This document shows, piece after piece, positions 49,261 to 56,280 of a stretch of 64,000 nt of DNA. The notes under the pieces were generated by a model, which was not told where the DNA came from, made no database searches, and saw nothing but the letters and a program-made list of their open reading frames with translations. This DNA comes from Iphione sp. A-MEVVRFRX5 (taxonomy: Eukaryota): NCBI GenBank assembly GCA_976226885.1, contig OZ320313.1:100130001-100194000 (forward strand). The letters are read 5' to 3'. A program made the translations under genes and the position numbers. Positions within the stretch are counted from its first letter, which is position 1. Each line of letters opens with the position of its first letter.

Positions 49261-52200
49261 TACTGGATATATAACTTACAATTAGTAATACAACACCATA
49301 TGCAGATGCATATGAAAATCGATTGTCTTATCGATTATGTACTTGAAGTTTCTTCGACTTGGAGAGGACCTCATATGGTCAGGGTGGCTTGGGAAGTGCC
49401 TGCTGGCCATGGAGGTGTGCTGAGAGTCTGGGGACGGACCTCTCATGGCCGGGGCGGCTCGAGGAGCGCCTGTCGGCTACAGGGGGCTGTTAGAAGTAGG
49501 GGAAGGGTCTGTCACAGCCAGGGCGGCTCAGGGGGGCGCCTGCTGGCTTGGGGGGGGGGGGTACTTGGAGAAAGGGGAAGGATCTGTTGCAGCCATAGCG
49601 GCTGTATCGGGCAGGTAGTGGCTGTGATTGATGCTCCCACCTGATTCCCTCCCACCCTGGGGTTCACATCAATCACCCAAGCTCCTGACTAGGGTGAGAA
49701 AACACCCAAACTTGCCAGCTCAGCATCAAAGAGGGAACACTCTTTCAGTTTACCAAAGGATTCCCCATAGGCCTTCGAAGAGAAGCAAACCCTGACATAA
49801 CACAATAAACACTTCAAAGAATAAGCCCCTCCCGCCTTAATATTGAGTTCCCCCTTGCAGTATGGAGGTTCCAGCTCTGCTATATAAGACAGAACTCGGC
49901 TGTGACCCCTGAGGGCCGGATCAATAGCTGCTAGTAGCTGAAATAAACTAATCACACATCCTGGATATGGACCCATGTGCATGTTCGTTTTCCCCTATGT
50001 AGAGTATACATAATGATACCAAACTTGGGAGCGACCAATGTTGGTCAGTCCGAAGCTTGGTCTCTTATACGGGTTTCAACCGTATTTGGGAAGAATACAG
50101 TCCATGACATTCTCCAATACAGTGAGTACTAGTTACCAGTTCTTGTGACCGAGGAAAACCTCAAGTATCAACTTGTTGGGAGACAGTAAGGTTTATAGTC
50201 GCCCTGAAGTTGAATGACGTACAGTGGTCCAAGGTAACATGTTCCAGGTAATGTCGGTATGATGTGGGAATTGGTGGTCGTGGTCGCCTATAGTAGAAGC
50301 TCCAAGTACAGTATTACGTATATATCAGTCATTTAGGCAGTATTGTTGGTTGGATGGCTGTTGGTTGCAGAGCAACCACTGTACAGTGAAAGGAGCCATC
50401 CTCTTCAATGATCTCCTGAAGAAGGCAGAAGTCTTCAGAAAGGCTTTGAAATGGGGGACTGTACCTGCATAGTGATGTCGCACAGCCACCTATACTAGAC
50501 CTTTGATTATACTGGACTAAGGGGCAATCACGTATCCATATATTCCTACGTCTGCGGATGTGTAGACGTAGAAAAATACCCATCCTGTATTAAATCATAT
50601 AGACCCTTCAGTTGTGCATGTGCTTGTGTACGTCAACGGAGCATACACATAGATGACGAACTGGTCCAGGGTGGGTTTTCTACATCTTTGTTCCGTAGGA
50701 AGCAGTGGTGAAGAGACATCTGGTTAACGTATGTAATTAATTAAAATAGACACTGCAGGAGGTATTCCACATCTCTGGACATGTAGACATGCCTTTCGTC
50801 TGTTGCATAATGGATACATGTGAACCGCCCCTAATTGTTAAGTGAGCAGATGTGCTCAAGAGGTAGTATGGATAAGGATCTTGTATTTGGCAATGACACG
50901 TAGGTATTTCTGTAACACTTAATGTGAAACTATAACTGTAAACTGAAGTTCTTGCAAGGTGATATCAGCAGTTCGGATTCTTATGATATATAACATTTAA
51001 AACATTTTGTGGAATTTGATGGAGCATTCTTCCGGTAAGATGGGTGTGACTAGTGATGCGGCAAACATGTATAATAGATAAACCTCTGTATGTGTTAAAA
51101 CGTCAGTTATGCCAATGTCTTATACGCTGAAATTTTGCTTTCTACAATAAATGCCAGATTCGAGCCTACCAAAGAAGCGTCTTGATTGGTAGCTCTAACC
51201 CTTATGCAATGCTGTTGTTCATATATAATGCAATGAAAACGCACAGGTTCCTATTTATGTAGCTCGGATAGTAAATGCAATAACATTAATTTATTTGTAG
51301 AGTAGGGTGTTTCAATGAAGTTGTCTTTATTGTGTACCCGAATTTTTGTAAATTTCAGTGAATCAAAAATGTGCTGAAAGCTGAAGAAAGAAAGACAAAT
51401 TCTGATAAAGATAACTTTATTTCAATACAGAAACTTGGCAATACCGTTGAGATTCTTAGCTCAGCTTTTAACGACATCCGAAAACATATAGACATTTACA
51501 TTTAACATAAATAAAGTAAACAAGAGAGGCGCCTCTATACCAGGCTACACTAAAACAATTGCGACAGTCCATTCTATTCCAAAAACTAAAACATTGAGCT
51601 TTATCAGGCTGAGGAAAGCATTGTAATACAGTTAGCTGATTTAGTATGCTTTCACTTCAGTAGGCAGTGCATATCCTCTGTAATACCCTGAAACATTAAA
51701 GTACGAATTTATTTTGTATCGACAAGATAAGAGATCTTGAATAAAAATGTATATACGAATGACATCTTTATCATATGATCACATGTAAGTGCTTTGGGTA
51801 ATAATTTACTTTCCTCTCTGAATCTACAATAGTGACACACTTAGCAAATAAATAGAGAATATGAGATAAATATATTAAACAAAAAAAGTATTGTGAAAGA
51901 CAAATCGGAATTGTAATCCTTGGTTAGAAAGTTTTACCATCACATCGTTGTCTGACGAAGACCCGGGAGGGTCGAAAGTTTACGACCATATTGCGATTTC
52001 GGGAACTCGAAATAAAGCCAGAATTTTACTTAAGCCGACGTTAAAGGTATTTTGATTTCACATCGTTTTACCTTACAGTTCAGCTTATTATGTACTTGAC
52101 TACTCGATTAATCCCATCTCTTGATATCCATTCTGGGATGAGTGATCACTGTATCTTGACTAACAGGTATATTCTTCACATTTGTTGTACTAGTTAGCAT

Positions 52201-52786
52201 GTTCCGTTTGATATATATGTACAAGCATTTTAAAGTCCAAAAGTACACAGAAAACGAAAGTCCTCGATGGAGAAATGCTTGCCTCTCTCTGCCCTGTCGA
52301 GTGATTACTCTCCCCATCTACCCGTTCCTGCTCCTCACTGGCTCAGAGACCCACCTAGGGCAGTCAGTAGAGGCAAGTGGCAGCTCAGCACTGGCTCCAG
52401 AGATCACAGGACCTGCTCTCTACTGGGTGTTTTGTATGCTGCATAAAGTAGAGTTCAGACTACATAAACTCTACCAGTGGTCTGACTTCCACTGACCAGA
52501 ACATTTAGCAATATCTGAATCGCCGAATTTGCAGTGACAAAGTTTTAAATAATAATGTTTGTCTTCCAGCAGCTAGCTGAGATATGCTGTGTTGACAAAA
52601 AAAATACAAATATAGAAGGAGGACAAGATAACAAACTCAATAACCGGTGGACGTACTCCTATAGGGCCTCGTGTGAACCGACCAATCTGGTCACACAGTA
52701 GACCACTGCATCTAGAGGGGGGAGCCGAGCGTCTGATGCCTTAACTTCACTAAAACAGAGAACGTTGGCGCAGCGTCGGAGAGGGG

Positions 52787-52978
52787 TCAGTCTATGTGGC
52801 CGGCATCCTTGATGTTGACGTATCGGGCGGCGATGCAGGCGGCGACGATGGTTGACAGACTGACCACGAAGGCAAAGATGTAGAAGGTCTCCTCGTCAAA
52901 GAGATCGGTGAACTTCGGCAGCATGCCGGAGATGCGAGTCACGATCTGGTGTTCGGCGGAGCCCTTCGGGAGAACCAT
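52787..52978 (-). CDS. 63-aa single-pass membrane microprotein, uncharacterised
   Basis: MVLPKGSAEHQIVTRISGMLPKFTDLFDEETFYIFAFVVSLSTIVAACIAARYVNIKDAGHID. Kozak gccATGG; 52 of 63 codons end in G/C within AT-rich flanks; one ~20-aa hydrophobic helix followed by R/K. Confidence 0.8.
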   Translation of the reverse strand: MVLPKGSAEHQIVTRISGMLPKFTDLFDEETFYIFAFVVSLSTIVAACIAARYVNIKDAGHID

Positions 52979-54835
52979 GGCTGACGATAGCGGGGGTCCC
53001 TTAACTTACAGATGTACAAAGCGCCGTCGTTCCAATGAATGAAGTAGCAGGGATTCGCCACACAGTCAATGCCAATACCCTCGGAATATGCTCTCTGTGC
53101 AGTGGGAGAGTTTTCTATGGCGATGGCTCACAACAGGTCTACAATTGAAATAACAAAATTGTGAAAAACAAAACCAACCTGTAAAAAAACAGGCTGATAA
53201 AGCAAAAGTTGCACATGAACCGAAATGGTTACAGACCGTCCTTAGGAAGATACATTGGAAACTCTCTTTAAGGACTACCATAGGCTAGTGCTGGTTCCTC
53301 ATAATAGGTGGCTGTTAGAGAAAGGCTACTTTTACTGCTAACTTTGTTCACTCTTTGCTTTGGTCTTTATAAAGAGTAGTTGTTGCAGAGAGGTGGCCAA
53401 TAAAAGAGTCTGTATTGTGCGTGATGTGCACAATTAAAACATACATCTATAAAAGGAAGGCTTGCTGTCCATTCACTGTGATCAATGCAAGGGCCGTGAG
53501 TGTACAATGAATATTAAAACAATGGCAAGGAGTGGCTACACTGCTGTCCACCCCTTCTTAACACCCCCCCCCCCCCTCAGTCCTCTCCGTACGTCACCAC
53601 ATAAGCGGAAAAAGCTATTACTTGAAACATGGAGAGCCCACTGTGGCAAATGTACATTTTCCCCTGAAAATATCCAAAATTTGTGACAAAAATGTTTTGC
53701 GCGCCAATGTTTGAAATTTGCTGCAAATCTATGTTTTTTGGCCCAGTACGGTGTAAAAGTTGTGGCAAATGTGTTGTTTTGGTGCAAATGATGTGTAAAT
53801 TAGATAATTTTCGACAAGATCTATCATAAGCTAGGTGGTCTCCCTTCACATAGCCCCTCACAGCAGGGGGTTGATAAGTAGCTCTGACACTCTTGTAATT
53901 TTATTGCAGCCACCTCTCACCTAGTGGCATCCAGTAGGGTGGCGGACTAGCTGGGACGTAGGGGGAACACTCGTCTCGTCAGCACAGAGATCACAAAGCC
54001 TCTTCTCTAGTCTAATTAGATGGAGGTGTCGTAGGAACCTCTCGCCGCTGCAGAAGTCACAACTGTTCTCTACTGGACTAGTATTTTGAACACTGCCTTT
54101 AGTGGAGTACAGGCTTCCCTTTGACTGATCAACTGATAATGGATCCCTGTACTCTCCAGACTAAAGACATGTCACATGTGTCACACTTGTCCCATGCAGT
54201 GGAGGTCAGTAGACAGTGTCAGCTTTGAACTGACTTTCACTGAAAATGTGTAAAATGCCTATTCATGAAATATCCATACCCGCGATAAAGAGCGGTCACA
54301 ATAGATCTAAAGAGATTAGAAGGCACTGGGACTATAGTGAGGGTTCCCACAGTCAAAATAGGGTACCTAACGACTTGCATCAAAACTTTGTGGATATACT
54401 GACTCATCCCCATGATACATCAACGTTGACTTATTTCGCCCAACCCCAAGTTATTTAACCCAGGGTCAGATGCTCATAAGACCTTTAATATTTATGCAAG
54501 TAAAAGAGACAGAGAAAATGAAATCCCTAGTTAACAATAATATGGTCACGTGGTGACAACATAATAATTATTTAAATAGTTAGATCAAATTTACAGTGGG
54601 TGGAATTGATTTTAACATGGGCGGAATCGTCCGGGTGAAATACGCTACGGGTGAAATCGACTATCTACTGAAACGTCCTCGACCACCTTCCTCCTAAGCA
54701 CAGTCCGAATCAAAGTATTATTAAATTCCTCTATCGCCAAAGTCGATTTCACATAACTGGAATTTCATCTAAATAATGTCCCTCCCTTTTTATAATGATA
54801 TCCAGGTCCATATACAATCGAACGTACCCATTACC

Positions 54836-55719
54836 GGTAACCGACTGTATATCGAATCCCATTATATCAATTGACCATATGATTGAAAGGACGTTTATCG
54901 AAAGACTATCGAAAATTTATATTGAAAAGTGTGTGGAGGAGTTGATGTGACATTAGGTAGATATCAGTGAGGTTATCACTGAAGAAGCAGCCAGTAGAGA
55001 GAGAGGTAGAGAGAGGAGAAAGGTAGAGAGAAGTATAGAGAGGTAGGGAGAGAGAGTGTGAGAGAGGGAGGGAGGGAGGGAAGGAGGATGGGAGGAACAG
55101 ACAGGTAGAAAGAGAGACAGGTACAGGGAGAGACAGTGGAGGAAAGAAAGATACAGATAAAGACAGAGACAGAGGAGAGAAAGGGTAGGAGGGAAAGAGA
55201 GATAGAGCATAGAGGATATAGAAAGAAGTAGGGAGAATGGAACAGAGAGGAAGATAAAGAGAAATCCAAGGAGAGATAGAGGGAGAGACAGACAGGTAGA
55301 GGGTGAGAAAGAGGAAAGAGAGAGGTCAAGGGAGGAGTAAAACAGAGATAGAGGAGAGAGAAGGAAGGAGGAGATGAGAGGCAGAGAGATAGAGTAGAGA
55401 AGAGAATAGAGCTCAAGAAAGGGAGGAAGAGAGGGAAGGGAAGGCAGAGACATAGAAGTAGAGGGAGGGAGAGAGAGGGAAGAAAGAGACAGGACGAGAG
55501 AGAGATAGGAGGAGGAGAGAATGAGAGAGAAAGAGACTGGTAGAAAGAGAAAGAGATAGGATGGAGGTAAGGAGAGACAGAAATAAGGGGAATAGGGGGG
55601 GCAATTCGATATAGTGGGATTCGATATAAGGTCGTTTGATGGAATGTCCTATCGATAAAAAGTCTGTTCGATCAAATGGTCATTCGATATAATGGGATTC
55701 GATAAAAGGTCATGCACCC
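54836..55719. mobile_element. Foldback-type non-autonomous element: ~80-bp inverted arms around a ~600-bp GA-rich core
   Basis: Left atcgaatcccattatatcaattgaccat, right atggtcattcgatataatgggattcgat; purine-rich tract at ~54994-55610. Confidence 0.75.
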
Positions 55720-55728
55720 CCAATTATG

Positions 55729-56280
55729 TACACCCTCTGTTCTTCTCCAAATCGTCCACATTTCAGACGTGGCTAGATTATGAATCTATTAGTAGGATAT
55801 GAAAGTCCTAAAAGTACTGAATTTGATGAATAAAAGTCCTAAAAGTACTGTCTCTCTGCAGCACCAAATTGGCGCCACAACACCTTCTTCACAGGGGTTA
55901 TTCATGTCTACCTTTCAAAATGACTTCTGAGGCCTCTCTGAGCCCCAGGTTCGTAAGACAACACCTCGTTCACGGAGGTTATTTATGTCTACCTTTGTAG
56001 AATGACTTCAAAGTCTCTCCGCAAGCCTAAATTTGCACGACAACACCTCGCCTACAGGGGTTATTCATATCTACCTTTGAAAATATCTTCTGAGGCCTCT
56101 CTGCCGCCCCAAATTCGTGCGACAACATTGTCCATAGGAGGACGCTCTGTAAAATTAGCTGTCCTTATTGTACACATCTTGGTATAATGGTTAACTATAG
56201 GAAACAATTCAGTTCTTTCTCAAATCGTCTACATTGACGCATCCACTTTGTAGACGTGTCTGCGAAGGGACGTCCAACTG
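55729..56280. mobile_element. MITE related to 43848, carrying the 31-bp unit plus an 82-bp repeat (x3)
   Basis: Right end ggaaacaattcagttctttctcaaatcgtctacatt...actgta matches 44500-44586. 31-bp unit at 55814 and 55845; 82-bp unit at 55877, 55958, 56040, 56122. Confidence 0.65.

What the first reader, a model, noticed from the sequence alone, without database searches (positions are those of the whole stretch)
52787..52978. Unnamed 63-aa single-transmembrane microprotein with a clear coding signature
Seen: perfect Kozak context, about 83% G/C at third codon positions in AT-rich surroundings, and an acidic/aromatic PKFTDLFDEETFY motif directly before a 20-aa hydrophobic helix, followed by a RYVNIK positive-inside tail. 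There is no signal peptide. It is short enough to fall below usual annotation cut-offs. From memory, not verified, it resembles uncharacterised short invertebrate proteins with a P.F..F.EETFY..TM..R[YF][IV].IK pattern. Inference: a conserved membrane micropeptide, possibly a regulator or subunit of a larger membrane complex. It lies about 17 kb from a muscle-type LIM gene, but no link is shown.
Basis: partly seen in the sequence, partly recalled or inferred. Interest (0 to 1): 0.7.

Follow-up and report, generated by a model that had tools for sequence, protein, structure and literature searches.

The report
Conserved protostome single-pass membrane microprotein gene
This is a real, single-copy gene for a 63-residue one-helix membrane protein from an unnamed family found across worms, molluscs, rotifers, flatworms, nematodes and insects; a 16-residue stretch at the membrane edge is almost unchanged in all of them, but nobody knows what the protein does.

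Summary
A 63-codon ORF lies on the minus strand at 52787-52978. Its GC3 is 82.5% in a window of 41.8% GC, with G at -3 and G at +4 of the ATG. It has one hydrophobic helix (about residues 32-51) and a basic tail.

It is a real gene:
- It is single-copy in the 1.18 Gb genome.
- Relatives are conserved exactly from ATG to stop.
- dN/dS is 0.03-0.29 where it can be measured.
- 27 of 31 invariant residues use more than one codon.

An exhaustive profile search found 121 cluster representatives. Named members come from annelid, mollusc, rotifer, flatworm, nematode and insect genomes, and all are called hypothetical. The family signature is P-x-F-x-D-Φ-F-D-E-E-[TS]-[FW]-Y-I-F, then a helix with a stripe of small residues, then S-[RK]-[YF].

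No Pfam, NCBIfam, PDB or literature match exists. The FXYD model does not hit it.

Charge distribution, a subgroup with an N-terminal signal peptide, and subgroups with long charged C-tails point to an N-outside, C-inside orientation. This is the FXYD-like layout, so I read it as an accessory subunit of a larger membrane protein. The partner is unknown. A co-fold with Na/K-ATPase fragments gave no answer. No transcript data were available for this locus.

The parts
52787..52978 (-). Complete CDS of the microprotein (63 codons plus TGA stop at 52787-52789)
   Evidence: ORF list and translation. 100% self-match and the only significant match in the genome. Homologues have the same length and the same start and stop.
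52922..52966 (-). Residues 5-19: moderately conserved amphipathic N-terminal helix
   Evidence: AF2 model helix 5-19. Hydrophobic moment peaks at residues 7-22.
52871..52918 (-). Residues 21-36: near-invariant juxtamembrane block P-K-F-T-D-L-F-D-E-E-T-F-Y-I-F-A
   Evidence: Invariant in the five closest sequences. Over 204 unique family cores: P21 96%, F23 99%, D25 84%, D28 96%, E29 100%, T/S31 96%, F/W32 100%, Y33 98%. The codons differ while the residues stay the same.
52826..52885 (-). Residues 32-51: transmembrane helix with a small-residue stripe (A36, S40, T43, A47, A50/A51)
   Evidence: Hydropathy. AF2 helix 29-53 with pLDDT 93-96. Fraction of small residues: 0.64, 0.93, 0.75 and 0.98 at positions 36, 43, 47 and 51.
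52790..52825 (-). Residues 52-63: basic juxtamembrane R-Y-V-N-I-K followed by D-A-G-H-I-D (the lophotrochozoan-type ending)
   Evidence: R/K52 80%, Y/F53 69%, I/L/V56 96% across the family. The GH[ILV]D ending is shared with the Paralvinella and Potamilus proteins.
52979..53138 (-). Putative 5' leader of the coding exon, preceded by an acceptor-like ...ttcaattgtAG at 53139-53149 (inferred, not shown)
   Evidence: A pyrimidine-rich ...TTTCAG/TGTAG site aligns in all five relatives upstream of the ATG. There is no ATG in the leader.
52500..53250 (.). Unique-sequence island holding the exon; dispersed repeats abut it at 52400-52498 and 53251-53396
   Evidence: DNA search of the own genome.

Best explanation
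SHOWN. The locus is an intact, single-copy, protein-coding gene under strong purifying selection. It encodes a 63-aa single-pass membrane protein. The protein belongs to an unnamed, uncharacterised family found in annelids, molluscs, rotifers, flatworms, nematodes and insects. The family is defined by P-x-F-x-D-Φ-F-D-E-E-[TS]-[FW]-Y-I-F at one end of the helix and S-[RK]-[YF]-[IV]-x-[IL]-[KR] at the other.

INFERRED, topology. The protein inserts without a cleaved signal. Its short acidic N-terminus is on the exoplasmic (luminal or extracellular) side and its basic C-terminus is in the cytosol. This is a type III orientation.

INFERRED, mechanism. It works as a small accessory or regulatory subunit. 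The helix packs through its small-residue face (positions 36, 40, 43, 47, 51) against a transmembrane helix of a larger secretory-pathway or plasma-membrane protein. The invariant acidic/aromatic collar and the Ser-Arg-Tyr clamp dock at the two membrane interfaces. This is the layout by which FXYD proteins bind the sodium pump.

The partner is unknown. The Na/K-ATPase is only the leading named candidate, at about 10%.
For: Coding and selection:
- Searches give homologues of 61-65 aa.
- DNA conservation starts at the ATG and ends at the stop.
- dS is saturated; dN/dS is 0.03-0.29; one close pair shows 4 synonymous and 0 non-synonymous changes.
- third codon positions vary in 57 of 63 columns against 22 of 63 for second positions, and 27 of 31 invariant residues use more than one codon.
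- single copy in the genome.

Family breadth:
- One search found 121 representatives at E<=1e-3.
- name Paralvinella, Lottia, Potamilus, Brachionus, Dicrocoelium, Heterobilharzia, Cichlidogyrus, many nematodes and Cotesia.
- The Atlas shows arthropod clusters.
- Some relatives come from the 'merc' source under ERR run labels. From my own knowledge, not checked here, this is a marine metatranscriptome catalogue, so the family is probably transcribed.

Topology:
- The N flank has net charge -3; the C flank carries 2-3 K/R.
- A subgroup of about 240 aa carries a conserved N-terminal signal-peptide-like segment and a long acidic C-tail.
- Rotifer, flatworm and nematode members have 40-170-residue charged C-tails, too long for tail-anchor insertion. 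The nematode tails carry a conserved NPF.

Packing face and interface conservation. Structure: helices at 5-19, 23-26 and 29-53.
Against: - No partner was identified. The co-fold with Na/K-ATPase alpha fragments gave no answer.
- No RNA or protein evidence exists for this locus.
- The topology is inferred from charges and from subgroups whose N-terminal extensions come from automatic gene calls.
- Most members have only a 12-13-residue C-tail and no signal peptide, which also fits a tail-anchored protein with the opposite orientation.
- The whole juxtamembrane block is conserved on every helical face, so it could equally be a lipid-interacting, self-assembling or enzymatically processed element.
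Confidence: 0.55

Rival explanations
1. It is a tail-anchored ER/SR protein with a cytosolic N-terminus and a short luminal C-tail. It would act like the regulins (phospholamban, sarcolipin, sarcolamban, endoregulin) on SERCA, or on another ER membrane enzyme.
For: There is no signal peptide, and in most members the helix ends 12-13 residues from the C-terminus. The nearest named Atlas cluster is SMIM6/endoregulin, but only at 0.82, which is lead level. From memory, sarcolipin also has aromatic residues at the cytosolic edge and an R-S-Y-type luminal tail.
Against: - The acidic N flank and basic C flank favour the opposite orientation.
- Family members with 40-170-residue charged C-tails, or with an N-terminal signal peptide, cannot be tail-anchored this way.
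- No Pfam hit to any regulin family at E<=10.
- Insects carry this family and, from the literature, also have sarcolamban.
Confidence: 0.12
2. It is the protostome functional counterpart of the vertebrate FXYD proteins. It would bind helix M9 of the Na/K-ATPase alpha subunit and tune pump kinetics.
For: It shares the FXYD architecture as defined in PMC7953255:
- a short ectodomain with a Pro/aromatic/Asp motif just before the helix;
- a close-packing helix face;
- a juxtamembrane Ser followed by basic residues (S51 82%, R/K52 80%).

No canonical FXYD gene reaches the PF02038 cut-off in this genome. All named members are protostomes, whereas FXYD is, from my knowledge, vertebrate-restricted.
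Against: - The PF02038 model does not match the protein.
- The motif spacing differs: P-x-F-x-D plus FDEETFY abutting the helix, against PFxYD several residues away.
- There are no conserved TM glycines.
- The co-fold with alpha M5-M10 pieces scored 0.00. The tool counts this as neither for nor against.
- Many other single-pass auxiliary paradigms fit equally well.
Confidence: 0.1
3. It is a membrane-trafficking or sorting factor, or a structural lipid-interface protein, not a regulator of a transporter. The acidic/aromatic collar and the cytosolic tail motifs would recruit coat or endocytic machinery.
For: Nematode tails carry a conserved NPF (an EH-domain ligand type). One subgroup has acidic, serine-rich tails typical of sorting signals. 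The R-Y-V-x-I element resembles YxxΦ.
Against: The tails are lineage-specific, whereas the invariant part is the exoplasmic collar and the helix. The Y sits only 2 residues from the membrane and is F in 26% of members, which is poor for an adaptor signal.
Confidence: 0.18
4. It is not a gene of its own: a chance ORF, a transposon fragment, or one exon of a larger protein.
For: There is no transcript evidence for this locus. Dispersed repeats lie within 300-500 bp on both sides. Splice-like GTAAGT and TTTTAG sites bracket the ORF.
Against: - The purifying selection is frame-specific.
- Conservation runs exactly from start to stop in six genomes.
- It is single-copy.
- Annotated 63-64-aa orthologues exist in Paralvinella and Lottia.
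- There is an in-frame stop 10 codons upstream.
- The bracketing splice-like sites are not conserved in relatives.
Confidence: 0.02

Closest known systems
FXYD proteins (Pfam PF02038; phospholemman, Na/K-ATPase gamma subunit)
   Same: Both are single-span proteins of about 60-90 aa. Both have a short N-terminal (inferred exoplasmic) segment with a Pro/aromatic/acidic motif next to the helix, a helix face built for close packing, and a juxtamembrane Ser followed by basic residues. Some FXYDs also lack a cleaved signal peptide (from my own knowledge).
   Different: There is no sequence homology: the PF02038 HMM is silent. The motif is P-x-F-x-D-Φ-F-D-E-E-T-F-Y directly abutting the helix, not PFxYD. 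Ala/Ser/Thr take the place of the two conserved Gly, and there is no conserved Cys after the Ser. The taxonomic range is protostome rather than vertebrate. Binding to the pump is not shown.
Regulins: phospholamban, sarcolipin, sarcolamban, endoregulin (SMIM6)
   Same: They are of microprotein size with a single helix, aromatic residues at the membrane edge and a short polar/aromatic C-terminal tail. They are also the nearest named Atlas neighbour (0.82).
   Different: Regulins are tail-anchored with a cytosolic N-terminus. This family's charge pattern and its long-tailed and signal-peptide-bearing members indicate the opposite orientation. There is no HMM similarity.
Database orthologues: hypothetical proteins of Paralvinella palmiformis (LSH36_108g02088), Lottia gigantea (LOTGIDRAFT_215104), Caenorhabditis nigoni (B9Z55_010924), Cotesia typhae (LOC141535002), Brachionus plicatilis (BpHYR1_037604)
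   Same: They belong to the same family and share the same core motif. The lophotrochozoan ones also share the length (63-64 aa) and the D-[AS]-G-H-x-D ending.
   Different: None has a name, a domain or a publication. Nematode and rotifer members carry lineage-specific C-terminal extensions.

Membership tests
Unnamed P-x-F-x-D-Φ-F-D-E-E-[TS]-[FW]-Y / TM / S-[RK]-[YF] microprotein family | Significant profile similarity over the full length to the other members | tested here: met
   E-values of 1e-15 to 1e-17 to four relatives with the single sequence. 65 and 121 relatives with profiles.
Unnamed P-x-F-x-D-Φ-F-D-E-E-[TS]-[FW]-Y / TM / S-[RK]-[YF] microprotein family | Core motif immediately followed by one hydrophobic helix and a basic juxtamembrane element | tested here: met
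   The window protein has P21, F23, D25, F27, D28, E29, E30, T31, F32, Y33, a TM at 32-51 and R52-Y53. It has A51 where 82% of members have Ser (16% have Ala).
FXYD (PF02038, ATP1G1_PLM_MAT8) | Match to the family HMM above the gathering score | tested here: not met
   No hit at E<=10 for the protein or for 46 relatives. The genome-wide six-frame search with PF02038 does not list this ORF, and nothing exceeds the cut-off.
FXYD (PF02038, ATP1G1_PLM_MAT8) | PFXYD motif in the extracellular segment (PMC7953255) | tested here: not met
   The family has P-x-F-x-D and F-D-E-E-T-F-Y instead, with different spacing and register.
FXYD (PF02038, ATP1G1_PLM_MAT8) | Two conserved glycines in the TM helix | tested here: not met
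   No conserved Gly. The small positions are filled by A, S and T.
FXYD (PF02038, ATP1G1_PLM_MAT8) | Juxtamembrane serine followed by basic residues | tested here: met
   S51 82% (A in the window protein), R/K52 80%. The Cys that FXYDs have at +3/+5 is not conserved.
FXYD (PF02038, ATP1G1_PLM_MAT8) | Physical association with Na/K-ATPase alpha | tested here: inconclusive
   The co-fold with own-genome alpha exons M5-M7, M8-M9 and M10 scored 0.00. The tool's verdict was 'no answer'.
Regulins (phospholamban, sarcolipin, sarcolamban; SMIM6 in PF15831) | HMM similarity to a regulin family | tested here: not met
   No Pfam hit at E<=10. The Atlas feature score to the SMIM6 cluster is 0.82, below the 0.9 lead threshold.
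Regulins (phospholamban, sarcolipin, sarcolamban; SMIM6 in PF15831) | Tail-anchored topology with a cytosolic N-terminus | tested here: inconclusive
   Charge bias and the long-tailed and signal-peptide-bearing relatives argue against it. No experiment has been done.

The most novel reading that the evidence does not exclude
The family is an obligate auxiliary subunit of a conserved ion pump or channel of protostomes that nobody has recognised. The most attractive version makes it the invertebrate equivalent of FXYD regulation of the Na/K-ATPase. That would mean single-helix tuning of the pump arose independently, or diverged beyond recognition, in the two great branches of bilaterians.
Probability: 0.1. 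Interest if true: 0.8.

Novelty: new variant of a known kind. Interest (0 to 1): 0.5.

Why it matters
Single-helix microproteins such as FXYD, phospholamban and KCNE are potent regulators of pumps and channels, yet invertebrate counterparts are largely unknown. Here a 16-residue membrane-edge motif is kept almost letter for letter in annelids, molluscs, rotifers, flatworms, nematodes and insects. The family has no Pfam model, no solved structure and no paper, and it includes parasites of medical and veterinary importance. Conservation this strong usually marks an obligate protein-protein interface. Orthologues exist in Caenorhabditis and in insects, so the function can be tested directly by knockout and partner proteomics. 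For annotation, the case shows that a 63-codon gene can be called confidently from comparative evidence alone.

Tried and rejected
- Pfam, NCBIfam and PDB sequence searches gave nothing meaningful. The weak hits (MrpF/PhaF, DUF5654, pilin) are hydrophobic-segment noise.
- Atlas feature and shape searches returned only unnamed arthropod clusters, plus SMIM6 at 0.82.
- No RNA runs were listed for the locus.
- Literature searches for the motif strings and for six orthologue locus tags found nothing.
- Database names 'Anoctamin' (Angiostrongylus), 'Hydrogenase' (Nippostrongylus) and 'NhaP-type antiporter' (a JGI entry) were examined. I rejected them as rule artefacts, because Pfam finds no such domain in the proteins scanned, P0107, P0196 and P0197.
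- Three long proteins fuse the motif and helix to a DEAD-box helicase of DDX55/SPB4 type. I read them as merged neighbouring gene models in nematodes, not true fusions.
- The GTAAGT and TTTTAG sites, and the 9-base repeat AAGTTAAGG that brackets the ORF, are not conserved in relatives and were dismissed.
- Co-fold of the microprotein with own-genome Na/K-ATPase alpha pieces gave 'no answer' at score 0.00. The pieces were exon-wise separate chains covering M5-M7, M8-M9 and M10, with no beta subunit. This is evidence neither way. The exons were not joined.
- I did not verify the host organism. The C-terminal D-A-G-H-x-D ending matches the lophotrochozoan members.

Full report
**The observation**

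The window holds a 63-codon ORF on the minus strand, from ATG at 52978 to TGA at 52789-52787.
- Third codon positions are 82.5% G/C, against 54% and 37% at positions 1 and 2 and 41.8% for the whole window.
- Local GC peaks at 0.595 exactly over the ORF.
- The start context is GCC-ATG-G, with G at -3 and G at +4.
- An in-frame TAA lies 10 codons upstream.
- Residues 32-50/51 form a hydrophobic segment with mean Kyte-Doolittle 2.34.
- The 15 residues before that segment have net charge -3. The tail after it starts R-Y-V-N-I-K.

The only corrections are the strand, and that the Kozak match is strong, not perfect.

**Is it a gene?**

A word-based protein search found four proteins of 63-64 aa at 57-62% identity. 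The block P-K-F-T-D-L-F-D-E-E-T-F-Y-I-F-A is invariant among them. I fetched their DNA and aligned it with 200-bp flanks. Nucleotide conservation begins at the ATG and ends at the stop, and the flanks do not align.

Nei-Gojobori estimates show synonymous sites at or near saturation. dN is 0.08-0.36, and dN/dS is 0.03-0.29 wherever dS can be computed. One close pair differs by four synonymous and no non-synonymous changes.

Third codon positions vary in 57 of 63 columns, against 22 of 63 for second positions. Of the 31 invariant amino-acid columns, 27 use more than one codon.

The protein has one significant match in the 1.18-Gb genome, namely itself. At the DNA level, 52500-53250 is unique, and dispersed repeats begin only outside that island. 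Chance ORF, transposon fragment and exon of a longer protein are therefore excluded as far as sequence can exclude them.

What is missing is expression evidence for this locus, because no RNA run was listed. Some relatives come from the 'merc' source under ERR run labels. From my own knowledge, not checked here, that is a marine metatranscriptome catalogue, so the family is probably transcribed.

**Gene model**

In all five relatives a pyrimidine-rich acceptor-like site (…TTTCAG) aligns with …ttcaattgtAG at 53139-53149 in the window. This suggests a non-coding first exon and a 160-nt leader, which contains no ATG. The first AATAAA is 1,074 nt downstream of the stop, with its first base at 51713 on the minus strand. 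These points are inferences.

**The family**

A profile of the five sequences recovered 65 proteins in the word-indexed database. An exhaustive HMM scan of 1.84 billion cluster representatives found 121 at E<=1e-3. A broader profile added more.

Every name attached to a member is 'hypothetical' or 'uncharacterized':
- annelid: Paralvinella palmiformis;
- molluscs: Lottia gigantea and Potamilus streckersoni;
- rotifer: Brachionus plicatilis;
- flatworms: Dicrocoelium, Heterobilharzia and Cichlidogyrus;
- nematodes: Caenorhabditis, Ancylostoma, Necator, Heterodera and others;
- insect: the wasp Cotesia typhae.

The ESM Atlas adds arthropod clusters of 54-88 members. No deuterostome or cnidarian name appeared. 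That is an observation, not proof of absence.

Conservation over 204 unique core sequences:

| Position | Residue(s) | Frequency |
|---|---|---|
| 21 | P | 96% |
| 23 | F | 99% |
| 25 | D | 84% |
| 27 | F | used as the alignment anchor |
| 28 | D | 96% |
| 29 | E | 100% |
| 30 | E | 73% |
| 31 | T/S | 96% |
| 32 | F/W | 100% |
| 33 | Y | 98% |
| 34 | I | 68% |
| 35 | F | 80% |
| 51 | S | 82% (A 16%) |
| 52 | R/K | 80% |
| 53 | Y/F | 69% |

Inside the helix, small residues dominate at positions 36, 43, 47 and 51 (0.64, 0.93, 0.75 and 0.98), with V/T at position 40. The spacing of 4-3-4-4 puts them on one helical face.

**What it is not**

- Pfam gives no hit at E<=10 for the protein or for 46 relatives.
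- NCBIfam and PDB sequence searches give only hydrophobic-segment noise.
- The FXYD model PF02038, searched in six frames over the whole genome, neither lists this ORF nor finds anything above its cut-off.
- The motif strings and six orthologue locus tags occur in no searchable paper.
- Automatic names such as 'Anoctamin', 'Hydrogenase' and 'NhaP-type antiporter' on three relatives are not supported by any domain.
- Three long proteins that join the motif and helix to a DDX55-type DEAD-box helicase look like merged neighbouring gene models in nematodes.

**Topology (inferred)**

Three lines of evidence agree on an exoplasmic N-terminus and a cytosolic C-terminus.
1. The charges point that way: D25, D28, E29 and E30 precede the helix, and R52 and K57 follow it.
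2. A subgroup of about 240 aa carries a conserved signal-peptide-like N-terminal segment (M-R-P-F-T-F-I…V-C-S). Its reading frame is kept across indels. The core follows, then a long acidic tail.
3. Rotifer, flatworm and nematode members have 40-170-residue highly charged C-tails. These are too long for post-translational tail-anchor insertion. The nematode tails carry a conserved N-P-F, a cytosolic EH-domain ligand type.

AlphaFold2 with the family alignment (mean pLDDT 80) gives an amphipathic helix at 5-19, a short turn at 23-26 and a 25-residue helix at 29-53, with pLDDT 93-96 in the membrane part.

The opposite, tail-anchored orientation is not excluded for the short-tailed members.

**Mechanism (inferred)**

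The interior of the helix is free to vary apart from one small-residue stripe, whereas both membrane interfaces are nearly frozen across the named phyla. This is the signature of a helix that docks side-on against another membrane protein and is clamped at both surfaces.

It is the architecture of FXYD proteins as defined in PMC7953255: an ectodomain motif, a close-packing helix, and a juxtamembrane Ser plus basic residues. I therefore read the protein as an accessory or regulatory subunit of a larger secretory-pathway or plasma-membrane protein. My odds are about 55% for this class of mechanism and about 10% for the Na/K-ATPase specifically.

I tried one co-fold. The partners were the own-genome Na/K-ATPase alpha exons encoding M5-M7, M8-M9 and M10, given as separate unjoined chains. 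It scored 0.00, and the tool's verdict was 'no answer'. This counts neither way.

**Rivals**

| Reading | Odds |
|---|---|
| Regulin-like tail-anchored SERCA modulator | 12% |
| Trafficking or sorting factor | 18% |
| Not a gene | 2% |

**Novelty and score**

The gene is an orthologue of proteins already deposited as 'hypothetical'. The sequence family is therefore not new to the databases, but it is undescribed: it has no model, no structure and no paper. It is not a member of FXYD or of the regulins, because defining features were tested and not met. It belongs to the known kind 'single-helix membrane microprotein' as a distinct, deeply conserved variant. Interest is moderate (0.5): the motif conservation is striking and genetically tractable orthologues exist, but there is no functional evidence yet.

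Noticed in passing
window 54950-55560: A strongly strand-asymmetric purine-rich tract (GC skew about 0.8, AT skew about 0.7) built of degenerate GA-rich 10-24-bp repeats. It also creates spurious 146-166-aa ORFs on the minus strand.
   Followed up: partly
window 55850-56127: A tandem array of 3.4 copies of an 82-bp unit (69% matches).
   Followed up: no
window 52400-52498 and 53251-53396: Dispersed repeat copies (69-87% identity to 10 other places on several chromosomes) flank the unique island that holds the microprotein exon.
   Followed up: partly
window 52743-52751 and 53006-53014 (minus strand): The 9-mer AAGTTAAGG occurs on both sides of the ORF, once inside a GTAAGT donor-like site and once just after a TTTTAG acceptor-like site. 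Neither is conserved in relatives, so this is probably chance.
   Followed up: yes
P0139, P0141, P0175 (proteins): Three predicted proteins join the family motif and helix to a DDX55/SPB4-type DEAD-box helicase. This suggests that in nematodes the microprotein gene lies directly upstream of that helicase, possibly in an operon, and is often merged with it by gene callers.
   Followed up: partly
P0107/P0197, P0238, P0149: Public automatic names 'Anoctamin', 'Hydrogenase' and 'NhaP-type Na+/H+ antiporter' are attached to family members of 75-105 aa. The ones scanned with Pfam show no such domain, so these are likely annotation-rule errors.
   Followed up: partly
G000:C17:50276894-50278307 (L030:1402-2815): The last three coding exons of a Na/K-ATPase alpha-subunit gene (M5-M7, M8-M9, and M10 ending …ETYY), with clean AG/GT boundaries. 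No canonical FXYD gene was detectable in the genome.
   Followed up: partly
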